A stretch of 64,000 nt of DNA from Ylistrum balloti (Eukaryota): positions 124,001-188,000 of the forward strand of contig NW_026782467.1 of assembly GCF_031769215.1 (NCBI RefSeq). The letters are read 5' to 3'. Below the pieces are notes generated by a model. It did no database searches. It saw nothing but the letters and a program-made list of their open reading frames with translations, and was not told the DNA's origin. This document shows, piece after piece, positions 4,901 to 60,231 of this stretch. Made by a program: the position numbers and the translations under genes. Each line of letters begins with the position of its first letter. The first letter of the stretch is position 1.

Positions 4901-4914
4901 GTGACTTCCCACTA

Positions 4915-16129: not shown

Positions 16130-16668
16130 CCTTTTTGTGACCGTTTTTGACAAGTGTTGCCGACTTCACATGTTTGTGACCGTCTTTGACAAGTGTTGCC
16201 GACTTCACATATTTGTGACCGTCTTTGACAAGTGTTGCCGACTTCACATGTTTGTGACCGTCTTTGAGAAGTTTTGCCGACTTCACAGATTTGTGACCGT
16301 CTATGACAAGTGTTGCCGACTTCACATATTTGTGACCGTCTATGACAAGTGTTGCCGACTTCACATGTTTGTGACCGTCTTTGACAAGTGTTGCCGACTT
16401 CACATGTTTGTGCCCGTCTTTGACAAGTGTTGCCGACTTCACATATTTGTTACCGTCTATGACAAGTGTTGCCGACTTCACATGTTTGTGACCGTCTATG
16501 ACAAGTGTTGCCGACTTCACATGTTTGTGCCCGTCTTTGACAAGTGTTGGCGACTTTATAGATTTGTGACCGTCTTTGACAAGTGTTGTCGACTTCACAT
16601 ATTTGTTACCTTCTATGACAAGTGTTGCAGACTTCACAGATTTGTGACCGTCTATGACAAGTGCTGCC
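16130..16668. repeat. 39-bp minisatellite, about 13.5 copies
   Basis: Unit gtctttgacaagtgttgccgacttcacatgtttgtgacc; 13-aa periodicity in ORFs 16047-16706. Confidence 0.95.
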
Positions 16669-16771
16669 GTCTGGTTCTATTTGTGGCAAACACAATTAGT
16701 TATTAAAGTTCCGAAGACTAACCGGTTTTATACCGCGATATAATTTATTAAAATGTGTAGTTGACTTTGAC

Positions 16772-18198: not shown

Positions 18199-19314
18199 TT
18201 AAGTGCTAAGATCTGATAGTTCTGTGGACATAGGGTTCGAAACCTCAGTGTTTGCCGGACTGTGGCCATTGTGCGTCACTTCCGTCGATAGGTTTGCCAC
18301 ACTGACGTATTCGTCCTCAAACTCACTCACACCTCGACACACTTTGAATGTGAGCAGCCTCCTGAACGCCATTCTGAACCCCCTGTTAAAGTTGTAATAG
18401 AGAAAGGGATTGAGCATGGAGTTGAGATACCCTAGCCACAAGGCCACTGTCCAGGGGATGTACGGAATTGTGTAGCCAATCATTGGATCAATGATATTGA
18501 GGATGAAAAACGGAAACCAGCACACACAGAAACATCCCATAATGATCGAGATCGTTTTCGCAGCTTTTGTCTCCCGTTTCAATTTCCCGGTGTGATGCTT
18601 GTGCAAGTTAAGTTCTAAACTACGGATATGTTTTGCTTGTTTTTCTGCTGCTATATATATTCTTACGTTGCACACAATCATAAAAATAGTCGGGAGGTAA
18701 AACGCTATGGTAGAACATACAACGGCGAAAGCGGTGTTCACCATGAAACTACAAGTCGAATCATCCGGAAACATACAATGGTACAAATCTTCGATTCCAA
18801 ACAGGTTCCATTCGTTCATTATTGGAACAAATGATATCAAAATGGGCGTGAACCAACAGCATACGACCATGCCAGCGATCACTGAATTGTTAAGTCGTTC
18901 ATGGAGAAATGGACGACAAATGGCAAGGTATCTGTCGATGGCGAGACATGACAGATGTATGATGGATGTCGTTGTAAACATAACGTCTAAACTCGTCGAT
19001 ACCAGACAAAGTGTGTGACCAAGCGCCCATGACTTATTACTAAGCTGTTGATATACTCCGAACGGCATCACCGACAGTGCCACCATGCAGTCGGCAAGCG
19101 CTAGAGACACCACGAACACATTTGTGATGGTGCGCAAGCGTTTATGCGTGAACACAGCTACTATCACAAGCGTGTTTCCGAAAAACGTAAGCACAGGAAA
19201 TAACGTCAGAATTAGACCGAGCACAGCCCGAACTTCCACCGAATAGAATGGCGGGGGACCCTGTTTGCCCTCCAATAGGACAGAACAGTTCACTTCCGGC
19301 GTTGTATTTAGCAT
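18199..19314 (-). CDS. HTR4: 5-hydroxytryptamine (serotonin) receptor 4-like class A GPCR, 371 aa, intronless CDS
   Basis: Seven TM segments with GN (TM1), LAxAD (TM2), D3.32 in LDVMFTTTSIIHL, DRY, CWFP and NPFLY. HTR4-like stretches: ISFVPIMNEWN, CSFMVN, CSTIAFYLP (C5.42/S5.43/A5.46), ETKAAKT...IIMGCFCVCW, NIIDPMIGY, LWLGYLNS. N-glycosylation sites NTT and NCS. An in-frame stop lies upstream of the ATG. Orthology to HTR4 is by recalled similarity only. Confidence 0.9.
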   Translation of the reverse strand: MLNTTPEVNCSVLLEGKQGPPPFYSVEVRAVLGLILTLFPVLTFFGNTLVIVAVFTHKRLRTITNVFVVSLALADCMVALSVMPFGVYQQLSNKSWALGHTLCLVSTSLDVMFTTTSIIHLSCLAIDRYLAICRPFLHERLNNSVIAGMVVCCWFTPILISFVPIMNEWNLFGIEDLYHCMFPDDSTCSFMVNTAFAVVCSTIAFYLPTIFMIVCNVRIYIAAEKQAKHIRSLELNLHKHHTGKLKRETKAAKTISIIMGCFCVCWFPFFILNIIDPMIGYTIPYIPWTVALWLGYLNSMLNPFLYYNFNRGFRMAFRRLLTFKVCRGVSEFEDEYVSVANLSTEVTHNGHSPANTEVSNPMSTELSDLST

Positions 19315-20329: not shown

Positions 20330-20900
20330 CTCCTATCTTAGCATCAGCTTAGTTTTATCAACCTTTGCTTATCTCATGAATTAACCCCAGTCTAGTCATA
20401 GCCATATTTCACGAAATTCCTTTCTTTACCGAAATATAGTCCTAACAATCTTTTAATAACCTTCTATCTTAACATCAACTTAGTCTCAATAACATTTTAT
20501 TAACCCTTTGTCTTAACATCAGTTTAGTCTCAACAACCTTTTATTAACCCTCTGTCTTAAAATCAACTTAGTCTCAATAACAATTTATCAACCCCTTGTC
20601 TTAACATCAGTTTAGTCTCAACAACCTTTTATTAACCCTCTGTCTTAACATCAGCTTAGTCTTAACAACCTTTTATTAACCCTCTGTCTTAACATCAGCT
20701 CAGTCTTAACAACTTTTTATTAACCCCCTGTCTTAACATCAGCTTAGTCTTAACAACCTTTTATTAACCCTCTGTCTTAACATCAGCTTAGTCTTAACAA
20801 CTTTTTATTGACCCCTTGTCTTAACATCAGCTTGGTCTTAATAACCTTTTATTGACCCCCTGCCTTAACCTCAGCCTGGTCTTAATAACCTTTAATAACC
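20330..20900. repeat. 44-bp minisatellite, about 10 good copies with decayed edges
   Basis: Unit ttaacatcagcttagtcttaacaaccttttattaaccctctgtc; anchors at 20469 and 20513. Confidence 0.92.
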
Positions 20901-29829: not shown

Positions 29830-31610
29830 ATCACGCTCACAACGGACAACGGTATTGAGAAATAAAATCTAATTTAGCACTAAAGAATAACATTACATTT
29901 CTGTTAATGTTGACCGCTACAACAATTATAAATATATAATACGTGTTATATGTATGTACACAATATACAGGAGACAAACATGAGTAGGTAATAAATAAGT
30001 AATTAATTCCGTAAAATACGTCACGTTTTGTAAATTTGAATACGTTTTCAAGGAGAAATAATATTTGGACAATGAGTGACTGATCAAACATTATTTGTTT
30101 GTCGTCTAAATTGCTACTTGACAATGGGAAATCTTCCTACGGGACAATGGAACAGCAGAAAATGTATCGAATCTCCTTACCGAACAATGGAGCAGCGCTT
30201 AATGTATCACCTTCCAGAACGGTGAAATGTCAAGTTGTATGTAGAAACGCACGAGTGCAAATAAACGATTTAAAGGGTCATTGTGACAAATTACCCGTAC
30301 AACACAGGTCGATGTTTTGATTACAATCGACACTTCTTTGACAATCAGTTCTGTATCTCGGACATAGCTCATTGACATCGTCATGTGAAATAAACAAAAT
30401 CTCTATGGTATTCGGACCTCTCGAATATAAAAATAATCTCTGAAGTATTTCGATTTCTGTACAATAAACAAGATGCCTTAAGAATTCTGATCTCTGTTAA
30501 ATGAAATGAACAAAAGCACTCTACCATTGTGATCTCTGTAAAAAATTCCATCTACAGATTTGTGTTTAGAAAATGGTTAGGAGATTCTTGTTATAAAATA
30601 GATAAAGGAAAAACGATATTGTCATTTACAGGATATCTTAATATTATGATAGAGGACCACATATTAAGTCCATGAATCAAATGACAAGTCTCTCTTTCAC
30701 CAACACAAGTACTTATTATCCAAAATATATTCCACTTTGGGAGTGTATTCCACTTTGGGAGGGGGGGGGGATGGTTGTCGATTGTGACAATTCTCCGTGA
30801 CGCGGGTTTCTCTTAATTATCCTGACATGATCTACACAACACTGTTACGACGCATTGTGACCATGGTCTTTGATCCCTGATTCAGACAATAACTAGAGTA
30901 TGTTCCGTACTAATAGCTTGGCTTTCTCCCAACCATTTTAGGTGTTTTACAACGAAGGACAGACGGACGGACGACACATCTAGCGAGTTACAGATACAGA
31001 GTACACACTTAATAGCTCTGATCTGATATCAACACCTCTAGCTAGTAATGTACCAGTAGTTCATTTATAACATGTATAAGGACGTCTGGACAGACGAGTA
31101 GCATGGTTACATAAAACCTACGGATCTTTACCAGGCGTTTGATAATCTTTATATATGTATAACAAATTTAGATAAAGCAACGTACACATTGTTAGACAAA
31201 GCATATGAAAAATATCAAAACAAAGAAATGTAATAATTTGTCTTTTACAGGTCAACAGCTCCATAAAATGTTGATTTCATGTTAAAACAATCCTTACATT
31301 TGACATTTACAAGCGTCCTGTTGACTCCGTTATATATAGCTTGTTTTTATGTTGATTACAAGTGCTATATGAAAAAGTGTTAAACATTTATTTTTAACTC
31401 ATTGAAATATCCAGTCGCTTTGAAATATAATACCTGCGTGTCACGTTTCATTCGGATAGCTTCACGCACGCACACATGGACTTAAAGTTCTTTTGAAATC
31501 ATTCTTTACTGAAAGTTATGAACTTTATTGAACGCCATAAGCGTTTTGATATTTATTTTGATCGAATTTTGTCTTCAGCCCTTGCAAAGTTTCAAACGAT
31601 GGTCCTTAGA

Positions 31611-31785
31611 ATCACTGACGAGACCTAGAAGGACGAAACGGCTGTATAATGTATCATCACTGACGAGAACTTGAAGGTCGAAACGGCTGTATGATGTATC
31701 ATCACTGACGAGATCTAGAAGAACGAAACGCCTGTATGATGTAGCATCACAGACGAGAACTAGAAGGACGAAACGGTTGTATAAT
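31611..31785 (+). ncRNA. Tandem array of four 45-nt minimal type-I hammerhead ribozyme motifs
   Basis: Each unit reads CATCA-CTGACGA-GnnC-T(A/T)GAA-G(G/A)nC-GAAA-C-GGCT-like loop-G-TA|TGATG-TA(T/G). Cores at 31615, 31660, 31705 and 31750 (the last is CAGACGA, mutated). Predicted GUA cleavage after 31646, 31691, 31736 and 31781. Confidence 0.85.
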
Positions 31786-34700
31786 ATTGTAAGATTTGCC
31801 ATTTGGCTCTATGGTTTCTAATTCTAATTTGTATCAAGAGATGTCTTTTGTTCAAGCTTTAAGTGTAACGGTTTTTTATCATATAAGTATTACAATGCAG
31901 GTCCCCATATGGTGACGTGGATGGCTGATGACTGGTTGAGTTGCTGGTTGGTTGACTCTGTCGACTTGGTTGGTTGACAGGATTTTCGTCTCTGCGACTC
32001 CTCCTGTGTCTGGGTATCGTCTCACCGACGGACGGATTGTTTATATAAACGGACGGGTGTAAACAGGGACATTGCAAGTGAAAAAAAGCAAGGGAAATAT
32101 CAAGATCCAAAGTGTTGCAATGAGGACAGCGCCTTTATCTAGATATCTTCAATGTCCTCTTGGTAGATAAACCATCCGATTCTCCAAGTGGATCACTTTT
32201 AATAATGAGGCAGTAGAATGCAACGTCCCTATTCTCTTCGGTGGCTCCTAAATAGAAGACATCAGAGAAGTTCTGTCCGTCCTGCTGACTTGTCCCATAA
32301 GTATTGCCTCTCCCGACATGTAGTAAATATACAGTAATGATAAGATTACATCTGATCTTGGTCAATAATCGGTAAAGTCCTATTACTTTTATCTCATTCC
32401 ACATCTGTTTAAATCATGGTACAACTTAACCTTGTGTTCTTGTCTTTACCCATTGCACAATGCTGTTTTCATCTGTATATATGTAGATAGCGATTTAAGT
32501 AAACTACTTCAGCGTGTAATATGCTGTTCAATTCTATAATATGTTACATTATGACCCATGAAATATGTTCCATATTTACTTTCATGTATAATATCTTACA
32601 GAACTATTTTTCTATAAGGTGTTTAGTATTCTGAGCTCAATTTGTTTATTTGAATTTTAAGCGTGCAGTTATGTACATTATTGTACTTCTGTGCCATTAT
32701 ATGACATAAACAATCTGTTTTTGTTTAGGACTAACGACTGCCGCCCTATGTTATCATTTGCGTAAGTGTGTTATAACTTACACAGACCCGTAAAATTATA
32801 CCAACAAGTACCATCACAAAACTACTTGAACGTACAGCGCAGCCGTCGACCTTCCATATCTGAGTCTAGTATTCAGATATACTCAACTGCTACTGGCAAA
32901 TCGGATCTGAATAAAGGCTAAGAAAATGATGCGTTTTTATGTATTGAAAACGACTGTGCAGACAACACGAGGCATTAACTTCTAGATTGTAGGTTTTTCT
33001 ATAACTCTTATTTCCATATGATTACGAATAAAATTTTGTTGCGAGACTATGGAAATGCATGGACAAGGAATGGAAAGAAATGTACAAGTGTATAAAAAGG
33101 AAAAAAACAGCGATAGATTCGACAGACCTGTCATTTTTTCATGCTGCCTTATGCATGGACAACAAAGATGAAGATATCTATATTTTTAATGTAAATCAAA
33201 GACACAATCATTGGCATTGGTAATAATTTAATAAAACGAGAAAACTGGCATGAAATCATCCCGCTTTCTTATAGAGTAACACTGTGAATTTGTTATTACA
33301 TAAACGATGAAAAATACACAATTCAATTAATGAAGCGTGGTTTTGCTTGCATGGCTGATTGATGTAGGTTGGAAGACTTAGTTCTCACGAAGTTCTATGA
33401 CGAGGGAACAGATATTCCTCACACCAAAAGATCAAAGAATAATGCCGAACTTTGATTTCTTTTTCGCGTTCATGAATGACCAGTCCTCCTTCTATCACAC
33501 CACCAATATATTCTCTACGTTCTTTCTCCTATCCTCCTAAGTCGTTGTTGTTTACTAGATACTTCTCGCAACATCAACCACAGCAGCTAGTTATAAAGAA
33601 TATTGGCAAGTAAACATATCTGTGAACCTCAGGATCCCAATCAATAACAGAATCATCTCATGTAGATCAAACGTTCAGATGAATCTTGAACCCACCTGTG
33701 TATTAACAGGCATCAACGTTATTTGTTTGTAATTTGTCTTCCCATTAACTGATAGCGTGCTACAGAGACGTAGAGATGTACATAAGATGACAAGAATCAA
33801 CACCACTCTGATCAAATGTTAAGAATTCATCAGGTTAGATCTAGTTGTTATGTAATATTGTTAGACTGGTCAGATCAACATTACAGCAAAATATATAAAA
33901 CATTGCCGTACAGAGATTTATATAAAAGAGCCTCATATGACGGATTATATACCATTTCGCAATTCCTCGCTGTTGTGTTTACCGTCGGTTGCCACTAGCT
34001 ACGAAATTCGACCTATGAGAGGTCACTCTCCTATCATGGTGGATAGAAAGATTATTCAAAACGTCACAAATGTCACGAATTTTCTTCCGTAATACAGACG
34101 AAGAAGCCTACTTAATACCCTAAACTATTTTAATATGACATCAAGTGTGTGTTTTGATGTGCGAACTACTTCCGACACGAATGCTCTCAGTCGAAAACAC
34201 GTCTGATGGGTTGGTAGATATACATATGTATAGATATATAGATAGATTAGTTGTTTGCTTCAGCTCGGACGTCTATCAAGCGCTAGTTATAAATTAACTC
34301 AAAATTGCTTAATGTCTAATCCATAACCATACTGAGTAACATTTATTTAATTCTATTATTTACATTCATAAATCTTATATTCGTCCTTCAAATAGCCTTG
34401 AATAGCTTCCCAAAAAACCTGGGATAATTTAATAATCACTTCACAAAACTATTTTGTGAAATGCTAATCACAGTGTTAATTATCATAAACAGATCAAGGC
34501 CACAAGATTCAAAACTGTTTGTCCCTTGTCGAGACAAATCAAACAGAATATTGAAATAGTTCCTACAGGAAATAAACATTATTTCTGCGTAATTGACCAT
34601 CACGTAAGGGATTAAGTTTTGCTGTGGTAACTCACATGTAAACAACTGAAGCCAAATCTGACATCATGAGGCGGTCTTACGTAAATCTCTCGACGATGTT

Positions 34701-37604
34701 TGTTTACAAATTTAAACTAATCCCGTTATATTAAAGAAATATTGAGAAAATTATTACCAGCGATGTTTTGGAATACAATGTTGTCCTGATCTTCAGCGTA
34801 CATCTTCCAATAAGGTAAAGCTGACTTTGTATTACGTATGTGAAAAAAAAATATTGCGTGTATTTCAAGAATGAAGACGAAAACATTGTAAACATGTCTG
34901 GAATTTTCTAGAAAAGATATTGATGATTTAGGAACTATATCTAGAAGCTGATCAAGTTAAATACAGAACTATAATGATACAATGGATAAACACATAACAA
35001 ACAGGAGTCTTATAAAACATGGATATCTGATAAAGATAGAATATTATCGATAACTGTGAAGTTCTCTGGACGTTACAGATAAATACACGCTTCCATGGCG
35101 CCCAGTGAAATATCCGACACACTTTTAAGATAGCCATCATCTATTCGAGCGTGCCCTGATATTTGGATTTATCATTGATAATGCGAAGTAACAGAGATTT
35201 CCAATAAAGCTATCCCAAGATAATGATAAAAAAACTTAAGTAAAATATACAACACCACTGAAGAAATTCACCAGTAGATCTTTGTCAATGCTTAACTTTT
35301 AGGTTTTATTTAGAGTAAATGCTTTCTCGGATCACGTGAGTAGAGTAGAGCACAAAATGATCGTAGGACTTTCGAGTATTTAATATTGCTTATGTTATAA
35401 ATGACAAAGGTGCCAAAGACGCCGAGATTGAATCTATCTCATTCATATTCGTTCAATGTAGACAACGGGAGTCTTTCAGAGACGTGGAAGACACCCGTTC
35501 CTGATACAAATTGTCCGTCCTTAAAGTCACTGATCTCTGCGCAGTGATTGGTATTGTCACCTAGATCACCTCAAACATGTGCTAATTAGTGGAACACAAA
35601 AGTAATTTTAGATCACTAGCGGATTATTTCGAATAAAAGTATCATGACCCAAGATAAAGACAAAAGGATTGAACGAGGACTGAGTCGATAAATTTGGAGA
35701 ACGAACAATGTCATTGATCTGTGTGAAAGAGACGACGATAAAACTGTACGATTCAAATTCCAAAATGTCTTAAGGTAGATAAACATTGCGAATTGATTAC
35801 TAATTCAGACAGATCTGCATCTGTTATGAAAATGGAAGGGTTTTCACGAATCATTATGTTACTATGGTCAATAGGAAAGAAACAGTTATCGTGCTTTCTA
35901 CATTACAAGGTACGTTGTAAGAACTGAAAGAAACACGTCATACTTTGTCATCTAACTGATGATATCCATATAAGATACATTTGTTCAATATCAAATTGTT
36001 GAGAACGTCCTACACAAGATCGATCTCCCTTTATTTTAAACTAAGTATCTAATTGCTACATCCTTTGATTACTCCCGTGGCGTTTGTCGGACTCTTTATC
36101 CGTGATTGGCAACTGCGCTCGGTGTCAAGGATGAAACAAAGCTGGCCTACTATTGGAAGATGACACAGTTGACTGTAAACATTTCAGTGTAAGAATAAGG
36201 GCACCCACATAACAGTACTAAAGATACAATAAGAAAGGTCACGTATCGTGGCCAAGGGTCATATGTCGCCATTAGGACTAGACTATCGAAGAACGAAGAA
36301 CATGGAAAGAAAACAGGCGTCAAAACCCCAATCAACTGGCGACATTATCACTAACGGAACTATAAAAGTACACTTAACGATATAGTATCCATCAACCAGT
36401 TGTACATGTAGATGTATAAAAACGTGTAACTGCATGTAATTTTTATGAATACGATCAACTGTAGAAACAAAATCCATATATTTTTGAAGCACCTGCTTTA
36501 GTTCTCGATTTTACTCCACTGGCAAACTTCTCTCATTTTTAGAATAGACATCCCTATGTAATAGGAGACTACAGCTGAGAGAAAATACTCATAGCTACAG
36601 AGCTCCTTCTTCATATTGTTGCGATAAAAAAAGATCTACAGTCTACCATGCTCTAGTATTGCTTCTTGATATACAGTTTTTTCTGTAGGTTATATCCCCA
36701 TAGCATATTTACATATACTCACTCTACCCACAGTCAGATCACAAGAGCTGTTTTACCCGCTTTAACTTTTCATCCCAAAATTTTTAAAACTTTTTCAGGA
36801 GTCTCCGTGTAAATCTTTCTTTTGTTCATATTTTGTTTTATGAATTTGAGTTTGAATAATGTTGTCATGTTAATATTTTCTTGATGTTTTTTTAATGACG
36901 TCGTAAAGCGGTGCCATGAAGATATTTGCTATAAGACCCGCTAACTTGAATTTTAGAATTACTAGGATTATTGATAAGCGACATACTGAGCGTGACGGAA
37001 AAACCGCTTCCGGAACTTCGTGGTTTATTCTTTCGTACACAATGCATTTATTGTTTTCTCGGTGTCTCCTCTGCTCTTATTGAAATGTTATCCTGGTTTT
37101 TGATGCCATGATATTAAATGCATTCTTTCTGCTCCGTGTTTAGAAATATTTTCGGACATAGCTTGTCTCCGCCGAGTATCCTTTCTGAAAAAGATTAGGC
37201 ATGATGTATCCCATATTATGACGAAAAACTGTACCAGTGACATATGTCTAACCAAACCATCAAGAGTTGGTGCACACTAAATTTTATAAATGATACAAGT
37301 AAACTGTGCTGTGTAATGCAAATTTAGAATTATATACGGAAGACCCCGATGAGAACTTAATTTGCATCATACAGCTATTTTGACTTTCTAGAATGCTGTG
37401 GGCCTAAATTGTTGAAACATAAGTTGGTCGAAAAAGACGGTCGAAATCCATGCTAAGAACCATCCGGTAAGGTGTGCTAGCTTCAGAATTCAATAAATAC
37501 ATACATTTGTATGTCAGAGATCTGCTTTCAAATGAACTAACGCTTGTGTTTATACTGAACAAACACATATTTCATACGAAGGAGACAACCTTGACGACAA
37601 CAAA

Positions 37605-40390: not shown

Positions 40391-41902
40391 CATATGACGT
40401 TGAAACCTACATTAACTTCTACACCAAGTGATTCACTAAACGTTGTCATTTTGAAATAACAGACGAGTCGAAAAAATCCTATTTATCTCAAAGCAGTTAA
40501 TACAGAAACAACCCTACCTTACCTTACCTTGAAATGAACAGACTAGTAAAGTGCTATATTTAGATTCATTTGACAGACAGTAGGATACTCAATATAGAAA
40601 TGCTTTTGGCTGTTGCTAAACAACAAACCGATCTAAAAACACTTGAGAGGAGAGTTGTGACGAGCCCTAATGTAGAGCATATTTGACTTAGGGCGTAACC
40701 ATGCGTCTAATTCACTTTTAAGAAACGTTACGTGTTCTTCACGGGACTTTTTTGTATTCAAGAGAAGATTACCCTTTATGTTTTGACGGTAATAAGATCA
40801 AACTGATCCTATTGTTAGGAATGAAAGGGCCATTTTGAATGGCTTTATTTCACACATCTATAGACAAAGCGTGTAAACTGATGGATATTGATCTATATTT
40901 GTGTTAGTATCAAATAAATAAAGCCTTATAATCGCTCTCAGTTCGTGAATATCGACACGGCGGCTTTTAAATTACGCCACCCAAATCACGCGGGCAATTT
41001 AGGGGCAAATATCGGTCCATTTTCAGTCATCTCCAATGTTTATTTAGATAAACCGAGCAAAATTACTTCCGTAATATTGTTATGTTGTGTAATAGAAATG
41101 GACCATTTCATCTTTTTGTAAGGAATGAGGTTGAGAAAAATGTGCATGTGATATATATGAAGAATGTGCCTTTTAATGTTTATCAATAAAACATTCCAAG
41201 AGATGTTCTTGCTCTGAATCAAAAGTAAAATTAGTTAGTTGAAGTTGCATATTGCAACCCCACCCTTCTCTTGGCCACAAGGTGGAGCTGCAGGCATCCT
41301 ACGCTGTACTTCCTTCTGTGTTACACGTGCTGACGCGAATGATGTCAGATATTATCTATGAACTTGTTTTGACATTTATTAAGCCAGTGTTATAAGTGTG
41401 ATCTGAGATTGGCAGAGAGGATACAAACATTCTTCATATATCTTTATAGAAAATCATGACTATCAGTCTTCAATCTTGAAGGTTTAGTAACACTTTTACT
41501 TGTTTTGTGTGATATCACCACACAGACACGACCCGCGTAAGAACATTCCTTACATAAGTAAATTTGTAGATACATGTGCACTTCCTGATGTGTGCTACAA
41601 TTTATTACTGATCCTCGTAACCACATTTATTTATGATTTACTAATTATATCTTTTAAAACGTGTTATTTTTCATAATAAAAAAAACAGATAGGGTGGAGA
41701 GTAATACCGGATATCTATTCTAATCCATCTTGAAACACATTTGAACAATTGACAGAATGCGGAAACGTGCAAACCTCTTGCTAAGTAAATAAACAGCAGT
41801 TATGGGTTGTTCAAATGCAAAGGATATCTTTGTAAAGATCTGTCTTCTGTGTAAAACGCCTGTAAATTGTTCAAAAAGACACAAACATGATTAGCATTTT
41901 CC

Positions 41903-42006
41903 GATACAAATTAAGAGTTAGATACAGTAGAGCCAAACAAAAACAAAAAATCAAAGTCGTTTCGTCCTTCTAGAGCATAAATTTCAAAATCTGGCGACTG
42001 AGGAAA
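41903..42006 (-). ncRNA. Truncated member of the hammerhead-containing repeat family
   Basis: The minus strand reads ctagaaggacgaaacgact...gtttggctctactgtatctaactcttaatttgtatc: the 3' half of the ribozyme plus the shared 3' flank. The CTGAnGA core is missing. Confidence 0.7.
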
Positions 42007-42857
42007 ATTCAAAGTTATAAAAAATGATAAAATCTTGTTGAGAGATGGTATCGCCCATATTTCAATAACTGCTGTAGTTTTCATGTATCTGATAATTTAA
42101 AAACAAATATTTCAAGTACATGTGTAGATTCGAAAACAAGCCACTATCCGAATAAATTAAAACTTAGAATGCAGGTTTTATAAAAATACTCGAATACAAT
42201 ACATTGTACTACGCGCTACTTTCCAGCAATCAACGGTATCAAATCATCCCGCTTTTTCACTTGTTGATGTTGAATATTTTTCCTAAAAAAGTACAAGAAA
42301 CAGAATTCGATGTAGTGATACACTAATACAATTCGTGATACACTGAAGCATCATTTCACTGATAACTCGCCGGTAACGACTCTCCAGTGACACGTTTATC
42401 TAGAGTTTTACAGAATTCTATGTGAATTTGCGGCATTTAAGTGCTTGCCTGTACAATATATGTGGTCTTTCTGCAGGAGTATATGTAACGGTCCCAATCA
42501 ACACTGAAATCGACTACATAGTATTGCCAATGAAAGCTATTTCAGTTTTCATCGTAGACAGAAACCATTGAAACAATGTCTATTTTTCTAATTTAATTTT
42601 CTGATTTAAATGTTTAAGAAGTTCTCTAAAGCAGATTCTCTATAATGTAAATAAAAGAATCTACAAAATAAAGGAAATTGGTTTATAAATGATATCAAAT
42701 ATCAATTTATTTGTTCATTGGTAAATATATTCTTAAAAGATTATTAAGATTATCATTTGACCTTTTTAGAACATATCTGATTTAATGGGCTGTTAAAGCT
42801 ATCGTCTAATTTTGTAACATTGTTGTGTGAATATACTATTAATACTTTCGTCTGTCT

Positions 42858-43570
42858 TTTTATGACATTATCGTTCGGTTGGTCGTTAGATTTTATGTCT
42901 ATCGTTTGTCTTTATGTCTATCGTTGTCTTTATGTCTATCGTTTGTCTTTATGTCTATCGTTGTCTTTATGTCTATCGTTTGTCTTTATGTCTATCGTTT
43001 GTCTTTATGTCTATCGTTGTCTTTATGTCTATCGTTTGCCTTTATGTCTATCGTTGTCTTTTTATGACATTATCGTTCGGTTGGTCGTTAGATTTTATGT
43101 CTATCGCTTGTCATTATGTCTATCGTTTGTCTTTATGTCTATTATTGTCTTTATGTCTATCGTGTGTCTTTATGTCTATCGTTGTCTTTATGTCTATCGT
43201 TTGTCTTTATGTCTATCGTTGTCTTTATGTCTATCGTTTGTCTTTATGTCTATCGTTGTCTTTATGTCTATCGTTGTCTTTATGTCTATCGTTTTTCTTT
43301 ATGTCTATCGTTTGTCTTTATGTCTATCGTTTTTCTTTATGTCTATCGTTGTCTTTATGGCTATCGTTTGTCTTTATGTCTATCGTTGTCTTTATGTCTA
43401 TCGTTGTCTTTATGTCTATCGTTGTCTTTATGTCTATCGTTTGTCTTTATGGCTATCGTTGTCTTTATGTCTATCGTTTGTCTTTATGTCTATCGATTGT
43501 TTTTTTTATGACATTATCGTTCGGTCTGTATTTAAACCTATTGATCGACTCTTTATAGCATTATCGTTCG
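42858..43570. repeat. 18/19-bp minisatellite with an interspersed longer cassette
   Basis: Unit gtctttatgtctatcgtt(t). The cassette atgacattatcgttcgg(ttggtcgttagat) occurs at 42862, 43064 and ~43509. Confidence 0.95.
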
Positions 43571-47700: not shown

Positions 47701-47830
47701 ATATATATGTACTTGACGTTGTTCTAAAATTATCTGATATATGAAAATTGCAAAGTTTATCTAATTTTTTGGGCAAGTGCATCTCTCTGTCTAGATGTTG
47801 ACTCCTAGGTTTCAAAATTTTGGACCCTTA

Positions 47831-47919
47831 GCGTCACTGACGAGTACTAAAAGGACGAAACAGCTGTATGATGTAGCATCACTGATGAGTACTAAAAGGA
47901 CGAAACAGCTGTATGATGC
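47831..47919 (+). ncRNA. Tandem dimer of 45-nt minimal type-I hammerhead ribozymes (best-preserved copies)
   Basis: GCGTCA-CTGACGA-GTAC-TAAAA-GGAC-GAAA-CAGCTG-TA|TGATG-TA-GCATCA-CTGATGA-GTAC-TAAAA-GGAC-GAAA-CAGCTG-TA|TGATGC. Both cores are intact. Stem I of the second unit is a perfect 6 bp (GCATCA/TGATGC); stem II has one A-G mismatch. Predicted cleavage after 47868 and 47913. Confidence 0.88.
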
Positions 47920-48608
47920 ATTTTTCTTGTTTTCGTCTACTGTATGTAACTATAAATTTGTATTAAAAGGTGTTATTCACTTGTGTCTTTTGTACAATGC
48001 TCTATTGCTAACAGAGAATATCCTGGATATCCTCTAAACTCTGTGATATAAAAAGACAATGGATTGCTCATTTACATATATTAAAACAAGTCATATCCAA
48101 ACATTGACAGAAATTATCTGTGTTCTGTGACTGAATTTTTCTATTTTGTTATGTTACATCCCTTATCGCCAAGCTAAACATCGATCTACCGCCTCGTCAT
48201 TTAGAATCCATATCTTTATTAATCATAATCACAGCTTCTGTACTTTGTATCTTCAACGAGCCAATTAAATTCAGAGCATTGCCCTACAGAATTGTAAAGA
48301 TTATAAGATACCCATAACTAATAAAATCAGTTTTACGGAGATAACTTACTGATTTTAGGCAACAGCCATTCTTTCTCACCAATATGGAGAAGGTAATCAC
48401 TGTAAACGACAGTTAATGTCCATGTTTGGTGTTAAAGACGTTTCCTTTCCATAAACAGTGGTAAAGTTACTATGTCTTTGTTTCAGATATCTCTTGTCAT
48501 AGGGACTGACATTTTTTCTTCCAATTTTCGTATCCTCCTCCCCGCGGCCTCTGTATCCCCCTCCCCGCAGCATCTCTCCGCCTCTCCTAAGTTTCAAAAT
48601 TCAGCATA

Positions 48609-48652
48609 GCATCACTGACGAGTTTTATAAGGACGAAACAGATGCATGATGC
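48609..48652 (+). ncRNA. Single minimal hammerhead motif, probably inactive
   Basis: GCATCA-CTGACGA-GTTT-TATAA-GGAC-GAAA-CAGATG-CA-TGATGC. Stem I is perfect, but the cleavage triplet is GCA instead of GUA. It shares the family flanks (48584-48710). Confidence 0.78.
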
Positions 48653-49496
48653 AATTTAAAATAATTCATAATTTGGCTCCACTGCATCTTAATCTAATTT
48701 TGTATCAAAAGTGCGATTCACTTGTTTAATTCTTCCTTCAGTTTTAACTAGCCTATGTGTAGGTAAATGAATGTTTTACTGGATACAATAACGCCTATAG
48801 TAGAACTGTGTCTGAAGATATCAGAGCATGACTACTAAACTCATGGATGGTTCGTATGTACAACCTCAAGGTATGTACAACAGCACTTAACAAAGAAAAC
48901 ACGTGAATCAGGAATAAAGGTTTTATAATGGCTTAAAATTTGTGGTGTTATTGACTTATATAAATGCACATAAAATACACTTTTACATTACATTTATATA
49001 TATAAGTGAACAGCTACATGAAGAAAAGAACAGTGTAGATTTATCGAAAGTATAGACATTGATAAAGCGAACAGTATATAGAGAGGCAGCTAGAAATAGA
49101 AAGACGAATTATACCTGTACGGTCACCAAAAAACAGATGCCCACCAGCACCACTAACCCACATTCCGTCAGACGGGACAGAAAATGGTGGTCAGTGTGAA
49201 GATGGCAAACGTGATCTCTCTGTGGCTTTTCGAAAAAGAGCAGGCGCGATAACGTCAGCCCAGAGATTAGAGCTAGGTTAGGAATGTGGATTATTTATTC
49301 AATTATTTTGACGGACTTAATAAATATCATCAACATGTCAGAATTTATCTAGTTTAGAATCATCTTCCTCTTCCTCCCTGTCCATAACCAATCATCTTGC
49401 TGCGACGTGTTCAGTGTTAGATTTGGTCTACAATTAGGGCAGGGTGTTGCCTTCTAAATTATAGTTTAAGAACAGGTCAAGAAGCATAGACGGCCC

Positions 49497-51268: not shown

Positions 51269-52640
51269 AATCTCTGCCAGTGCTTCCTATATTTCCCTTC
51301 TGCTCATTTTTCTATCCTTCTCCTCCACTGAATGGCCGTAATAGTATACGAAAAAACCCGTTTAGTAGATAAATAACATGTTATATAAAACAGCTGACAA
51401 TAAATACTTATAAGGTGAATCTGTAATGATGCTGTACATTTATATTGCAGTATTTAATGTCGCAGTCATGGATTTAATCTTGAATTCGTAAATTTACAAC
51501 TGAGTGACTACAAAAATAAAACGAGCGCGTTGTTGTATGATTGGAGTACAGTGTGCTGAGTGTATGAACCGCTGTGTAATGTATATACCAGTACATGTAA
51601 CACATCATAACGTCACGTATACCCACGCCAAAGTATACAAGGAACGTCAATGTTGTCAAATAAGAATTTGACGTTTTACGGCAGCTTACTGCGAACGCCC
51701 TAGACTTAAATGTCAGCACAAACAACGGTCCTTGTGTGTAAATTTACAGAGTACAAAACAAAAACTCAAAAAATAAAAACACGATCCATGCTGCTATCAC
51801 ATTTGAAAAGTGTTAGTATGTTTCTTCGAAACAATAAAAAAGTCCCGCGTGCGCACGCGATCGCCTTTGGCTAGACAGCTATGTTCATTCTATTGCAGTA
51901 TACATGATACATATGATACATATGGAGCAGGTGTAATGCGATTCCGGTGGAAAGATAATTCTGTCCTGTTTAATCTAATGCCCATGACATGCATGGTAAA
52001 GTCAAAAACATTCGCATGGTAGTTTGCACGTGTGCCGTACAATGACTCTATGGACAATGGACCAATAGATACTAGCCCCTTATTTGGGCAAAAGAACACT
52101 CTAATGATAAACATTGGTCAATAACCAACTACCAGTAACCAAGGACGATAAACTAGGCCATAAAATATCCGAAACGCTGTGTCCTCACGGCTACGAAATA
52201 TTTGAAGGGTGTATCAAAAGTCGTTCCTGATTCACATTTACGTTGCTCCTGGGCTCATTTATTGTATTGGTTTATTTTGGTTGATAAACTTTTTCTTGTT
52301 TGCATTTAATTTACATAAATGTCTTAAAGGACCGGAATCCGAATAGAATTAACAAGAAAATAAAGGACCTTAATTTGGCAGCCTTTATTCTGTTCTAATC
52401 TGTAGCAGTTATTGCTGCGAAAATTACGTAAACTAGAACAAAACTGTTTTAACACGTTACTGAAATTGTCAAAACTTTTCTCCAAGACATATTGTACATA
52501 CCTTGATGTTCGATTCTATTGGAGAATTACAGACCTGATTTGGTATCCCAAACATGGACTGTACAAAACGTACACAAATGAATAGCGCCTTCCAATACAA
52601 ACTTAGTTAGATACAGTATAGCATAAACGTGAATTAAATT

Positions 52641-52681
52641 GCATTATATAGCCGTTTCGTCCTTCTAGGACTCAGTGATGC
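52641..52681 (-). ncRNA. Minimal hammerhead motif with a 3-nt core deletion
   Basis: Minus strand GCATCA-CTGA-(nGA deleted)-GTCC-TAGAA-GGAC-GAAA-CGGCTA-TA-TAATGC. Stem II is perfect, and the shared 3' flank ctgtatctaactaagtttgtatt is present. Confidence 0.75.
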
Positions 52682-54758
52682 CTAAATCTCGATGCTTATG
52701 AGGCGACTGAAGAAAAGCAAAGTGACGAATGAAACGTCAACATATTTACGGGGAGATGCACTACCCCATGATTCAGGAAATTTCGTTATTTTCATATATC
52801 AGATGATTTTAAAACATCGTCATGTACATGTGTAAGGGCAACGTAGAGACTGAACGCCTGTATAGAGATCAAGATAACATGATGGCAGGTATAATATTTG
52901 AGTTGTATCTTATTGTATTTGGTGTACGTCTGTTACATGGCATTACAATTATCTTGGACAATCACAGACAAACCCTCCATAGCACTGTCGGAATAGACTT
53001 TTAGATTACATTACTGCTATGTTTCACACTGTTGCCTCTCTGATTTAAATTTTGTTTGCTTTCCATGTTGTAACTAATTTACAAATGTCAAGAAAGAAAT
53101 TGTTTCAAATTTAACACGAGGTTAGCTCTTCACCATTGCATGTTGTTTCCAATCCCGTCACTGCAGAGCGTCTGATCCCTCCAACATACAGGTTAATCTT
53201 TGACTTAAAGATGCTCCACGGTTTGATCTACACAGTTTAGCCTCTGGTGTTTAAATGTGTCAGATTCTATAATGTTGGATATTTTCACAGCATTAGTATT
53301 ATCTCTAATAAAGGAACCAGCGTAACTACTTCTCCGGAATTTCGAATACTTGACGCTTGCGCTATTCGATAAACATGTGCAAACGCCGGATCAATGTCAA
53401 CAGTTCCCCGCTGGAAATCGGAGAGATTCCAGGTTTTATTTAACGTTGGCATGGTGTTAAGATAGATTCCAAATTGCATTTTCTCCAAAACTAATCATTT
53501 CTACTAATTGAATTGTCTGCTTTCTGTGTATTTCGCCCTATGGAAAGCAATACATGTCGAAAAGAAGATTACTCTAGTGTAAACAGCTCTAAACTTCCAA
53601 TGGACAATCTGATCGTATACAATGTAATTCGGAATAAATCATATATTGCAACATATTTACTGTTTCGGTATACGCACACGATAAATGGATATAAGTTACT
53701 CACCAAATTGTTTAAAGTTTCATTCCCTTTATACAATGAAAACGTTTACAGAAATTTTAAGAAATACCAATTTATCGTGTTTCGGTAAGCAAATACTATG
53801 ATTTATTTAACATTTTTGTTTTATACTCAGTTTTATTGAGCTTTCATGAATCAATATACAGTGACGTATTTAGATCTAACTTTCTTGTAATATGCGATGC
53901 TCGGAGGGAATACAGAGACCAATCATTTTCAATCGATTACATTAAAATAAATAAACAAGGACCGAATGTTAGCCTTACTTTAGTATTGCTGTATTTACCG
54001 GAACCGGAAGTCGACTTGACTTTACCTAAAAATGATACGTAGACAGTATATCGTCTCCTGGATAAAACTCATAGACGTCATTGCCAAACGTTACCAAGTG
54101 ATGCCAGAATATGGATCTATTTTTAATCCGATGTACACTAGTGTCAACCTGTTGGCACTGAGCACCCGTCTGTTTCCCCAAACAACTGTAAATAGAACGC
54201 CGGGATCAGCATCCACATATTGCCACACGTGTCGTTACAAGACAGCTGCCAACACGCTTAGTAGTGCATATAATTAAATCTTTATCACTTCGTTTCTCTA
54301 AACACAAACATGGAGAACAACATAATGAAAAAATATCAGTCTTGAATCTGGATTGCTGTGAAGTGGGTGTAAATGTGTTGAAATTCGATGGTAATGGAAT
54401 TTCTAATAATATCATCCATTATTTTCGTGAAATATACTCTTCAAAATAGGCTCATCCAGATGGTTACTTGTGTTTCGTCCGAATCTCTTTCTTTGTATTA
54501 TTTTGATATTTGTTGTAAACATATCTTACTGAAATAATTAAAATTTATTGTTATTAAATTGAATAAGTAAAATCCTTGTATTATATTCAGAACGACGTTT
54601 TACAGCAGTAATCTATATAAATAATATATAATAAATAACTCACGTGACAAGAAATCAGAGAAATTCATCAAAGCAAATCTCTCAATCCTTAAATCGACAT
54701 CCATTGATGACATGCATGAATTTAGCTGGTGTATGTACTGGTATAACGTGTAAGCGAT

Positions 54759-60079: not shown

Positions 60080-60122
60080 CATCACTGACAAGTCCTACAA
60101 AGACGAAACAGCTGCATGATGC
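60080..60122 (+). ncRNA. Minimal hammerhead motif inside a ~119-bp direct-repeat unit, probably inactive
   Basis: CATCA-CTGACAA-GTCC-TACAA-AGAC-GAAA-CAGCTG-CA-TGATG, with core G8>A and a GCA triplet. The upstream ggacat..ggttt.gttatttaggacctta.catcactgac is repeated at 60046 and 60165. Confidence 0.75.
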
Positions 60123-60231
60123 AGATTGTTTGGCTCTATTGTACGATCTAATACATGAGAGATAGGACATTTACAGGTTTCGTTATTTAGGACCTTAACA
60201 TCACTGACTTACACAGAGATTCGTGAAAATG

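What the first reader, a model, noticed from the sequence alone, without database searches (positions are those of the whole stretch)
31611..31785. A minisatellite whose 45-bp unit is exactly one hammerhead ribozyme
Seen: four tandem 45-nt units, each with the hammerhead core (CUGAnGA...GAAA...GUA) and stem I CATCA/TGATG. Stem II keeps its closing G-C pair in every unit. Stem III is only 2 bp around a near-palindromic loop. Units are joined by only TA(T/G), with no cargo sequence. Established: minimal type-I hammerheads with a palindromic loop III occur in Penelope-like elements and animal non-LTR retrozymes, whose monomers are typically a few hundred nt. Inference: self-cleavage of a read-through transcript would release 45-nt monomers (TGATG-TAT-CATCA-core-...-GTA). 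Once circularised, a monomer forms a closed hammerhead with all three stems capped. The array is what rolling-circle copying of such a circle would leave, and the monomer is far smaller than the retrozyme monomers I know. Units 2 and 3 look closest to functional; unit 1 has a weak stem I and unit 4 a core mutation.
Basis: partly seen in the sequence, partly recalled or inferred. Interest (0 to 1): 0.88.

Follow-up and report, generated by a model that had tools for sequence, protein, structure and literature searches.

The report
Decayed hammerhead-ribozyme minisatellite in mobile element
Four head-to-tail 45-base copies of a self-cutting hammerhead RNA motif sit where an old ~365-base mobile repeat carries its ribozyme. 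The family is huge in this genome and its ribozyme-only repeat seems undescribed, but this copy is worn and looks like ordinary repeat growth, not the footprint of a 45-base RNA circle.

Summary
Window 31610-31789 is four 45-bp units, each a minimal type-I hammerhead (HHR) joined by 3 nt. Units 1-3 keep the catalytic core; unit 4 has CAGA for CUGA.

It is not a lone oddity. The genome holds 7,922 near-consensus units (reversed control 0), in arrays of 2 to at least 119 units. The family consensus is a perfect HHR with an 8-nt palindrome at helix III. It passes Rfam's curated thresholds both as type I within a unit and as type III across unit junctions.

The rolling-circle reading is not supported. 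Every array sits in a fixed phase at the ribozyme position of a dispersed ~300-365-nt non-coding element with conserved arms, and single-HHR copies lie in this same window. A ribozyme-dead 30-nt unit and another part of the element have also been tandemly amplified. About 18% of the window is unrelated minisatellite.

The window array is old: 87% identity to consensus, stem II mispaired in all four units, below the Rfam threshold, and no better folding than shuffles.

One point stays open: HHR units are far better conserved between loci (~90%) than their arms (~60-72%).

This scan had already noted the same family elsewhere in this genome, with similar verdicts. I class it as a new variant of a known kind (HHR-bearing retrozyme-like repeats).

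The parts
31433..31609 (+). Upstream arm of the carrier element. It ends ...GGTCCTTAG immediately before the first hammerhead unit.
   Evidence: nhmmer hit 31484-31610 to the up-arm profile built from other loci (E 3.2e-6). The 5' extension to about 31433 (CCTGCGTGTCACG...) is shared with copies at window 42106, L033 and L046.
31610..31654 (+). Hammerhead unit 1. Core intact. Helix I has 3 of 5 pairs (A1, A39). Stem II has one A.A mismatch. Predicted cleavage after 31646.
31655..31699 (+). Hammerhead unit 2. Core intact, helix I 5 of 5. Stem II is G-C, A-U (A14/T24), A.G, C-G. Predicted cleavage after 31691.
   Evidence: The monomer folds at -4.8 kcal/mol, z +0.71.
31700..31744 (+). Hammerhead unit 3. 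Core intact, helix I 5 of 5. Stem II is G-C, A.A, U-A (T15/A23), C-G. Loop III is GCCU, which is not palindromic. Predicted cleavage after 31736.
   Evidence: The junction of units 2 and 3 folds at -4.5 kcal/mol, z +1.65.
31745..31789 (+). Hammerhead unit 4. Core dead (CAGA in place of CUGA). Helix I 3 of 5. Stem II has two mismatches. Its last bases merge into the downstream arm.
31790..31876 (+). Downstream arm of the carrier element (...TTTGGCTCTATGG...TTTGTATCAAGAG...).
   Evidence: nhmmer hit 31793-31876 to the down-arm profile (E 4.8e-8); alignment
47714..48007 (+). Second copy of the same element. Up arm 47714-47831, two hammerhead units 47832-47921 with the perfect ACAGCTGT palindrome, down arm 47926-48007.
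   Evidence: Rfam Hammerhead_1 scores 24.6 and 20.9 bits, below the threshold of 34.
48584..48727 (+). Third copy, 5'-truncated, with a single hammerhead (48610-48654) and the down arm.
52547..52821 (-). Fourth copy, with both arms and a single hammerhead whose 5' core is partly deleted.
41867..42106 (-). Fifth copy, with both arms and only the 3' half of the hammerhead left.
60080..60124 (+). Further single hammerhead-like unit (9 mismatches to the unit consensus) with short arm remnants.
37277..37352 (-). Isolated remnant of a down arm.
   Evidence: E 5.8e-7

Best explanation
Window 31433-31876 is an old, decayed copy of a very abundant non-coding mobile repeat. The element is about 300-365 nt long: an up arm, one canonical metazoan type-I hammerhead, and a down arm. 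It resembles a retrozyme.

In this family the 42-nt hammerhead plus a 3-nt linker has been tandemly duplicated inside the element. This gives 45-bp arrays of 2 to more than 100 units.

Inferred: copy number then changes mainly at the DNA level, by replication slippage or unequal exchange. This genome does the same to many other short segments.

Mechanistically, a lone unit has only a 2-bp helix III. Two neighbouring units pair their ACAGCUGU palindromes into an 8-bp helix III, while UGAUG-UAG-CAUCA closes helix I. Each unit junction then forms a complete type-III-like hammerhead, the classical double-hammerhead. The fold and the Rfam matches are shown; cleavage is inferred.

A transcript of a young array should therefore cut itself into a 45-nt ladder. 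The hammerhead is the conserved module of the family, which points to constraint in the source copies, followed by neutral decay after insertion.

The four units here share a stem-II-breaking change and one has a dead core. This locus is most likely inert or at best weakly active.
For: The family is real and large:
- 7,922 matches to the 32-nt consensus core with at most 1 mismatch, against 0 for the reversed control.
- At least 272 matches to the 175-nt array.
- Arrays of 2 to 119 or more units at about 20 sampled loci.

The hammerhead is bona fide:
- The consensus of 789 units has a perfect core, a 4-bp Watson-Crick stem II and the ACAGCUGU palindrome.
- RF00163 hits reach 41.6 bits against a gathering score of 34.
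- In L036 there are 51 type-I hits at or above gathering. Ten junction hits also match Hammerhead_3 at 50.3 bits against a gathering score of 48.5.
- A consensus junction folds as the three-way junction at -16.4 kcal/mol, z -2.9, with 0 of 200 shuffles folding as well.

The array is embedded in an element:
- Flanks are conserved and in the same phase at every locus.
- Arm profiles hit 21 and 40 times in about 330 kb, including seven copies in this window.
- Single-hammerhead copies occur in the window.
- Partial head-to-tail arrangements [down][up][HHR][down] occur at L033, L035 and L040.

Growth at the DNA level:
- A 30-nt unit lacking stem II and half the core is repeated three times in tandem in L036.
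- The down arm itself forms a 72-bp tandem array at L047:3021-3366.
- About 11 kb (18%) of this window is other minisatellite, mostly with periods of 19-160 bp.
- Units within an array share variants, for example A14 and G31 in all four units here, and T1/C21/G31 in L050.

Decay after insertion:
- There is no stem covariation. Six double-compensatory changes were seen against 8.5 +/- 2.6 in shuffles, and 371 broken pairs against 368.7.
- Only 69% of units have an intact core and 48% are fully intact.

Constraint in source copies:
- None of 14 array-consensus changes falls in the core (p 0.015).
- Units between loci are about 90% identical and array consensuses 96%, against 60-64% for the arms (nearest neighbour 72%).

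This locus is worn:
- Units are 87% identical to the consensus, and arm identities to the arm consensus are 0.63 and 0.71.
- Rfam scores are below threshold.
- Fold z-scores run from 0 to +1.7.
Against: - No transcription or cleavage data exist for any copy.
- The link to an autonomous partner was not made. No Penelope-like ORF lies in the roughly 330 kb sampled.
- Variants such as A14 occur in several units at 7-10 loci. This fits arrays inherited from array-bearing source copies, or made during reverse transcription, as well as in-situ DNA growth.
- Array consensuses stay almost identical to the family consensus although the arms are very diverged. Simple neutral in-situ turnover does not predict that.
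- The sampled loci were picked by similarity to the array, which favours well-kept arrays.
- Whole-element RNA is not more stable than shuffles (z +0.46 and +2.23), unlike the highly self-paired retrozyme circles described in PMC7229834.
Confidence: 0.68

Rival explanations
1. The arrays are made, or resized, at the RNA-to-cDNA step. The reverse transcriptase that mobilises the element (presumably from a Penelope-like element) slips or switches template between identical hammerhead units. Each new insertion is then born with its own copy number. DNA-level change afterwards is minor.
For: - Variants such as A14, A15 and A45 are present in several units at 7-11 independent insertions, as if inherited from array-bearing source copies.
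- Array consensuses have no core changes (0 of 14).
- Units are much closer to the family consensus than the arms are.
- Intact 755-aa GIY-YIG frames in 5.36-kb head-to-tail tandems show that Penelope-like elements are present in this genome.
Against: - A ribozyme-dead 30-nt unit is locally triplicated, and the non-repetitive down arm is tandemly amplified at L047.
- The genome makes minisatellites from many unrelated sequences.
- Alternating-variant patterns inside L050 look like block duplication in place.
- No autonomous element was tied to these arms.
Confidence: 0.2
2. A 45-nt hammerhead RNA is released by self-cleavage, circularised and copied by rolling-circle reverse transcription. The arrays are the genomic products of that copying, making this a minimal retrozyme whose whole genome is one ribozyme.
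For: - The unit is exactly one hammerhead, and junction hammerheads pass Rfam thresholds in young arrays.
- Arrays look younger and more uniform than their arms and stay close to one family consensus. This could be read as repeated refreshment from a common RNA pool entering existing hammerhead sites by homology.
Against: - All arrays examined sit in the same phase between the same two arms. None was found without arms.
- Single-hammerhead copies of the element mark the ancestral state.
- Dead units are also amplified.
- There is no covariation or other sign of selection on units once they are in the genome.
- No RNA data exist.
- A 45-nt circle closing all three helices would be severely strained, and nothing of that size is reported for retrozymes (150 to over 1000 nt, PMC7229834).
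Confidence: 0.05
3. The array at this locus has been taken over by the host. For example, it might act as a self-cleaving module that truncates or destabilises a read-through or intronic transcript, or as a source of small RNAs.
For: Three of the four units keep the catalytic core. Two stem II changes in this array restore or keep pairing: A14/T24 in unit 2 and T15/A23 in unit 3. Each of these two pair types occurs only once among the 789 sampled units.
Against: - The copy is one of the most diverged in arms and units.
- All four units carry a stem II mismatch, one core is dead, and the folds are no better than shuffles.
- Six further decaying copies lie in the same 64 kb.
- No gene model was tied to the site. 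The nearest clear gene is a GPCR about 12 kb away on the other strand.
Confidence: 0.03

Closest known systems
Animal non-LTR retrozymes: tandem repeats carrying type-I hammerheads and expressed as circular RNAs (Cervera & de la Pena 2020, PMC7229834; Li et al. 2026 preprint, 10.64898/2026.07.22.740005)
   Same: Both have a canonical type-I hammerhead with helix II of 4 bp and a 2-bp helix III capped by a 4-nt palindromic loop. Both are non-coding, AT-rich and present in thousands of copies. The carrier element of about 300-365 nt matches the 350-390-bp mussel retrozyme repeat in size. Partial head-to-tail copies occur.
   Different: In retrozymes the tandem unit is the whole 150-450-bp element. 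Here the unit that is repeated is the 45-bp ribozyme alone, inside an element that is mostly dispersed as single copies. Element RNA is not predicted to be highly self-paired. Circular RNA was not tested.
Classical hammerhead satellites and the double-hammerhead: newt satellite 2, Schistosoma Sm-alpha and cave-cricket pDo500 (Forster et al. 1988, as cited in PMC4209133)
   Same: The hammerhead is encoded once per satellite unit. The short helix III makes a lone ribozyme weak, and two copies pair to form an extended helix III. Here that is the 8-bp ACAGCUGU duplex.
   Different: Those satellites have units of about 330-500 bp, with the two ribozymes hundreds of nt apart. Here neighbouring ribozymes are 3 nt apart, so every junction is itself a compact type-III hammerhead of about 51 nt. 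No tRNA-like head of the kind I recall for Sm-alpha (not checked in a paper here) was detectable.
Minimal hammerheads of Penelope-like element pseudo-LTRs, which act as dimers (Cervera & de la Pena 2014, PMC4209133; Lunse et al. 2017, known to me by title only)
   Same: Both are retroelement-borne hammerheads that need a partner copy, are massively abundant in invertebrate genomes, and occur in partial tandem insertions. Penelope-like ORFs are present in this genome.
   Different: As described in PMC4209133, PLE min-HHRs lack helix III and loop 3 and have a long helix II of 7-8 bp. This unit has the canonical architecture. No RT/GIY-YIG ORF was found next to any sampled array.
Minisatellites born inside mobile elements of bivalves, such as tandem-repeat-bearing MITE- or Helentron-type elements (from my own knowledge, not checked in papers here)
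   Same: An internal segment of a dispersed element is expanded into an array of variable length between conserved arms. Many such arrays occur per genome. The window is about 18% minisatellite.
   Different: Here the amplified segment is a complete catalytic RNA motif, and it is the best conserved part of the element.

Membership tests
Hammerhead ribozyme, type I (Rfam RF00163) | Conserved core CUGANGA ... GAAA ... U-H at the three-way junction | tested here: met
   Units 1-3 of the window array have the full core. Unit 4 has CAGA. The family consensus is perfect, and 69% of 789 sampled units have an intact core.
Hammerhead ribozyme, type I (Rfam RF00163) | Score at or above the curated gathering threshold (34 bits) | tested here: not met
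   The window array scores 27.5 bits, from an alignment that splices units 1 and 2, and nothing reaches gathering. Other copies of the family do pass: up to 41.6 bits genome-wide, and 51 hits in L036.
Hammerhead ribozyme, type I (Rfam RF00163) | Helices I, II and III formed by base pairing around the core | tested here: inconclusive
   Helix I is 5 of 5 in units 2 and 3, and 3 of 5 in units 1 and 4. Stem II has one or two non-standard pairs in every unit. Helix III is 2 bp. The MFE folds of the window units and junctions are not hammerhead-like or are no better than shuffles. The consensus units do fold correctly.
Hammerhead ribozyme, type I (Rfam RF00163) | Site-specific self-cleavage after H17 | not testable with these tools
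   No transcription or cleavage assay is available. Predicted sites are after 31646, 31691 and 31736.
Hammerhead ribozyme, type III (Rfam RF00008), formed across unit junctions | Closed helices I and II and an open helix III, with a score at or above 48.5 bits | tested here: not met
   Not reported for the window arrays. It is met by ten junctions of the young array in L036, at 50.3 bits, and by the consensus junction fold at -16.4 kcal/mol.
Animal non-LTR retrozyme | Tandem repeat in which every unit carries a type-I hammerhead | tested here: met
Animal non-LTR retrozyme | Monomer of about 150-450 bp comprising the ribozyme plus non-ribozyme sequence (PMC7229834) | tested here: not met
   The repeated unit is 45 bp, made of a 42-nt ribozyme and a 3-nt linker. 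The carrier element of about 300-365 nt fits the size but is mostly dispersed. Only partial head-to-tail copies were seen.
Animal non-LTR retrozyme | Expressed as highly self-paired linear and circular RNAs | tested here: inconclusive
   Expression cannot be tested here. The predicted stability of element RNA is not above shuffles (z +0.46 and +2.23).
Penelope-like element pseudo-LTR hammerhead | Located in the terminal repeat of an element that encodes RT plus a GIY-YIG endonuclease | tested here: inconclusive
   No such ORF lies in about 330 kb around 20 arrays or in the window. GIY-YIG frames of 755 aa exist elsewhere in the genome, but their flanks could not be fetched.
Penelope-like element pseudo-LTR hammerhead | min-HHR architecture: no helix III or loop 3, and a long helix II of 7-8 bp (PMC4209133) | tested here: not met
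   The unit has a 2-bp helix III with a 4-nt loop and a 4-bp helix II.

The most novel reading that the evidence does not exclude
Young arrays of this family (for example L036, with over 140 near-identical units) are transcribed and cut at every junction into 45-nt RNAs. These are ligated into circles or copied as multimers. The resulting cDNA re-enters existing hammerhead sites by homology. That would explain why arrays are much younger and closer to one family consensus than the arms around them. It would also make this the smallest natural ribozyme-only replicating unit known.
Probability: 0.07. Interest if true: 0.9.

Novelty: new variant of a known kind. Interest (0 to 1): 0.48.

Why it matters
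Hammerhead-bearing satellites and retrozymes are known, but their repeat units are reported as 150-450 bp. My literature searches found no case in which the ribozyme alone is the repeat unit.

With units only 3 nt apart, every junction is a compact, self-contained hammerhead. A single internal duplication therefore turns a weak lone ribozyme into a competent one. This gives a simple, testable route from a mobile-element ribozyme to a satellite.

At about 8,000 near-perfect units, the family is also a natural library of hammerhead variants. The sharp contrast between the conserved ribozyme and the fast-diverging arms bears on what hammerheads do for the elements that carry them.

On the practical side, the 45-bp (15-codon) unit is open in one frame on each strand, so long arrays can be miscalled as genes.

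The locus in this window is a worn copy and has no evident role of its own.

Tried and rejected
- tRNA-derived SINE head in the up arm. I noticed box-A/B-like strings, but ARAGORN found no tRNA in five loci and Rfam found no tRNA-like hit in a well-kept copy. Dropped.
- Rod-like retrozyme fold of the whole element. It is not supported (z +0.46 and +2.23).
- Covariation as evidence of selection on genomic units. None was found.
- A Penelope-like ORF beside the arrays.
  - The 527-aa ORF between the two arrays of L040 is a host LRR-Ig gene.
  - Other long ORFs near arrays are a Ty3/gypsy pol, a Mab-21 gene and a DDE transposase fragment.
  - All other long ORFs are read-through of the repeats.
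- Fetching more loci, including the flanks of the GIY-YIG hits.
- Other species or samples. Two exact-pattern scans of the metagenome contigs gave 0 hits. This says little, since animal DNA is sparse there.
- Literature. Searches for hammerhead with minisatellite, oyster, Crassostrea, scallop or bivalve found no description of a 45-bp ribozyme-only repeat. Lunse et al. 2017 is not in the library and could not be read.
- My first fuzzy-regex unit finder missed most units. I replaced it with a Hamming scan.
- One repeat finder was swamped by a 25-bp satellite and gave nothing useful.
- The organism was not identified. Animal origin rests on GPCR, LRR-Ig and Mab-21 genes. 'Bivalve' or 'scallop' comes only from earlier notes of this scan and was not checked.

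Full report
**1. What is there**

TRF reports 31611-31785 as 3.9 copies of a 45-bp unit with 87% matches. Read in register, the units start at 31610, 31655, 31700 and 31745.

Each unit reads, in order:
- CATCA (helix I, 5' strand)
- CTGACGA (core)
- a G...C-closed stem II with loop TAGAA
- GAAA (core)
- C-GGCT-G (helix III and its loop)
- TA (U16.1 and H17)
- TGATG (helix I, 3' strand)
- a 3-nt linker

Stem II keeps its G-C closing pair in every unit. Helix III is 2 bp. The linkers are TAT, TAT and TAG. Unit 1 has a weak helix I, and unit 4 has CAGA for CUGA.

A loose hammerhead pattern hits five times in the window against 1.03 expected. All five hits lie in this array or in a second two-unit array at 47832-47921.

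Rfam finds nothing at gathering in the window. A local search gives Hammerhead_1 at 27.5 bits against a threshold of 34, from an alignment that joins unit 1 to unit 2.

**2. It is one copy of a very large family**

The 175-bp array finds at least 272 matches on many contigs of this 648.5-Mb genome. A 32-nt consensus core with at most one mismatch occurs 7,922 times, and its reversed control occurs 0 times.

In about 20 loci that I fetched, arrays range from 2 to at least 119 units. Several are cut off by the end of the fetched stretch.

The consensus of 789 units (315 distinct) is a textbook minimal type-I hammerhead. A reference unit is L036:4142-4186. Its features are:
- a perfect core
- a stem II of four Watson-Crick pairs
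- a helix III of A-U and C-G around AGCU, so that ACAGCUGU is an 8-nt palindrome

Rfam's Hammerhead_1 model passes its curated threshold on genome copies, with a best score of 41.6 bits and 0 of 14 control genomes matching.

In the young array of L036 there are 51 Hammerhead_1 hits at or above gathering. A further ten stretches of 51 nt spanning unit junctions pass the type-III model, at 50.3 bits against 48.5.

A consensus junction folds as the three-way junction at -16.4 kcal/mol, z -2.9. This is the double-hammerhead known from newt and viroid RNAs (PMC4209133, citing Forster et al. 1988). It is compressed here so that each junction is a compact hammerhead.

**3. The array sits inside a mobile element**

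At every locus the array begins after the same flank (...GGCCCTTAG) and ends into the same flank (TTTAATTCATTGTTTGGCTC...), always in the same phase.

Profiles of the two arms hit 21 and 40 times in about 330 kb. The up arm is 155 nt in the profile and extends to about 220 nt in some copies. The down arm is about 95 nt. The whole element with one hammerhead is therefore about 300-365 nt.

The arms of the copy under study are 31433-31609 and 31790-31876. The window holds six further copies or remnants:
- 47714-48007, with two units
- 48584-48727, with one unit
- 52547-52821 on the minus strand, with one broken unit
- 41867-42106 on the minus strand, with half a unit
- 37277-37352, a down arm only
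- 60080-60124

These are shown. Single-hammerhead copies show the ancestral state. The 45-bp repeat arose by duplicating the hammerhead together with three flanking bases.

Three loci show [down][up][hammerhead][down]. These are partial head-to-tail copies, as seen in retrozymes and Penelope-like insertions (PMC8557442, PMC7229834).

The element size matches the 350-390-bp retrozyme repeats of mussels (PMC7229834).

**4. How the arrays grow**

Several observations point to ordinary DNA-level tandem duplication.
- A 30-nt derivative that lacks stem II and half the core is repeated three times in tandem in L036.
- The down arm forms its own 72-bp tandem array at L047:3021-3366.
- By my sum of the non-overlapping TRF rows, about 11 kb (18%) of this window is unrelated minisatellite in 16 arrays, most with periods of 19-160 bp.
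- Units of one array share variants. A14 and G31 are in all four units here, and T1/C21/G31 run through L050 together with alternating sub-variants.

After insertion the units decay without visible constraint.
- Double-compensatory stem changes number 6, against 8.5 +/- 2.6 in shuffles. Broken pairs number 371, against 368.7.
- 69% of the sampled units keep the core and 48% are fully intact.
- Within arrays the core is hit at 0.72 times the rate of other positions (p 0.002). This is a weak effect that base composition could explain.

**5. What does not fit simple neutral growth**

Array consensuses differ from the family consensus at only 14 positions in 21 arrays, and never in the core (p 0.015).

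Identities between loci are as follows (Wilcoxon p 9e-5 for units against arms in the same insertions):

| Compared between loci | Mean pairwise identity | Nearest neighbour |
|---|---|---|
| Single units | ~90% | not computed |
| Array consensuses | 96% | 99% |
| Up arm | ~60% (shuffled control 58%) | 72% |
| Down arm | ~64% | 71% |

My loci were chosen by similarity to the array, which favours well-kept arrays. But the unselected copies in this window show the same trend: hammerheads at 86-90% (by my count from the alignment for the single-unit copies, and for the arrays), and arms at 63-84% for the two arrays.

Two explanations are open:
- The hammerhead is under selection in many diverged source lineages. 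I favour this one. It matches the heterogeneous retrozyme populations reported in mussels (PMC7229834).
- Arrays are renewed after insertion.

Variants such as A14, present in several units at 7-10 loci, show that at least some arrays or units were inherited from array-bearing sources. Growth during reverse transcription therefore cannot be excluded.

**6. This locus**

The four units are 87% identical to the family consensus and 85% to each other. The arms are among the most diverged.

All four units carry A14, which breaks the second pair of stem II. Unit 2 restores that pair with T24. Unit 3 keeps the third pair through T15/A23. Each of these two pair types occurs only once among the 789 sampled units, so I treat them as chance.

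Monomer and junction folds are no better than shuffles, with z from 0 to +1.7, and are mostly not hammerhead-shaped. I expect little or no self-cleavage here.

**7. Relation to known systems and novelty**

The motif is the canonical metazoan type-I hammerhead (PMC4209133). The carrier looks like a non-LTR retrozyme or a derivative of a Penelope-like element (PMC7229834; preprint 10.64898/2026.07.22.740005).

Retrozyme monomers are reported as 150-450 bp. My searches found no description of a repeat whose unit is the ribozyme alone.

I could not tie the element to an autonomous partner. GIY-YIG frames of 755 aa in 5.36-kb tandems exist in the genome, but their flanks could not be fetched.

I class the family as a new variant of a known kind, and this locus as a worn member of it.

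Earlier notes of this scan describe the same family at other places in this genome, and the second array of this window, with similar verdicts. I reached my reading before seeing them, and I tested the shared claims myself.

**8.

In vitro transcription remains the right experiment, best done on a consensus array.

Back-spliced GTA|TGATG reads are not informative, because every genomic unit boundary already has that junction.

The spread of the arrays is explained by the carrier element rather than by 45-nt circles.

Noticed in passing
window 1-64000: About 11 kb (18%) of the window is minisatellite, in 16 separate arrays. Examples are 42 bp x 51 at 2765-4904, 25 bp x 71 at 49497-51275, 60 bp x 27 at 62331-64000, 39 bp x 14 at 16134-16669, 44 bp x 11 at 20437-20900 and 19 bp x 33 at 42892-43504. 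The genome seems unusually prone to tandem amplification of units of 20-60 bp.
   Followed up: partly
window 18199-19314 (-): An intronless 371-aa ORF for a rhodopsin-family GPCR (Pfam 7tm_1, E 4.6e-61). It is the only clear host gene that I identified in the window.
   Followed up: partly
L042:7296-9269 (-), L036:5532-6878 (+), and other long arrays: The unit is 45 bp, which is 15 codons, and is open in one frame on each strand. Long hammerhead arrays therefore read as ORFs of up to 658 aa, with 15-residue repeats such as ...SLTSPRRTKQLYDVA.... Gene finders could miscall these.
   Followed up: no
window 49465-51338 (+): The CT-rich 25-bp satellite is open in all three forward frames for 600-620 aa. 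This is another likely source of spurious ORFs.
   Followed up: no
L047:3021-3366 (-): The down arm of the hammerhead element is itself tandemly repeated at least four times, with a 72-bp period, away from any hammerhead.
   Followed up: partly
G000 contig C422:240415-261997, and C129:50248 and 67535: GIY-YIG domains lie in open frames of 755 aa. On C422 they are repeated five times at about 5.36-kb spacing. These are probably intact Penelope-like elements in head-to-tail tandem. Their flanks could not be fetched.
   Followed up: no
window 31655-31744: The only A-U at stem II pair 14/24 and the only U-A at pair 15/23 among the 789 sampled units both lie in this four-unit array. I read this as chance, but it is an odd coincidence.
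   Followed up: partly
L032:2-1735 (+); L039:8136-9518 (-); L040:3128-4711 (+): Near other arrays lie a Ty3/gypsy-type pol fragment (RVT_1, RNase H, integrase C-terminus), a Mab-21 family gene and an LRR-Ig gene. None is related to the hammerhead element.
   Followed up: partly
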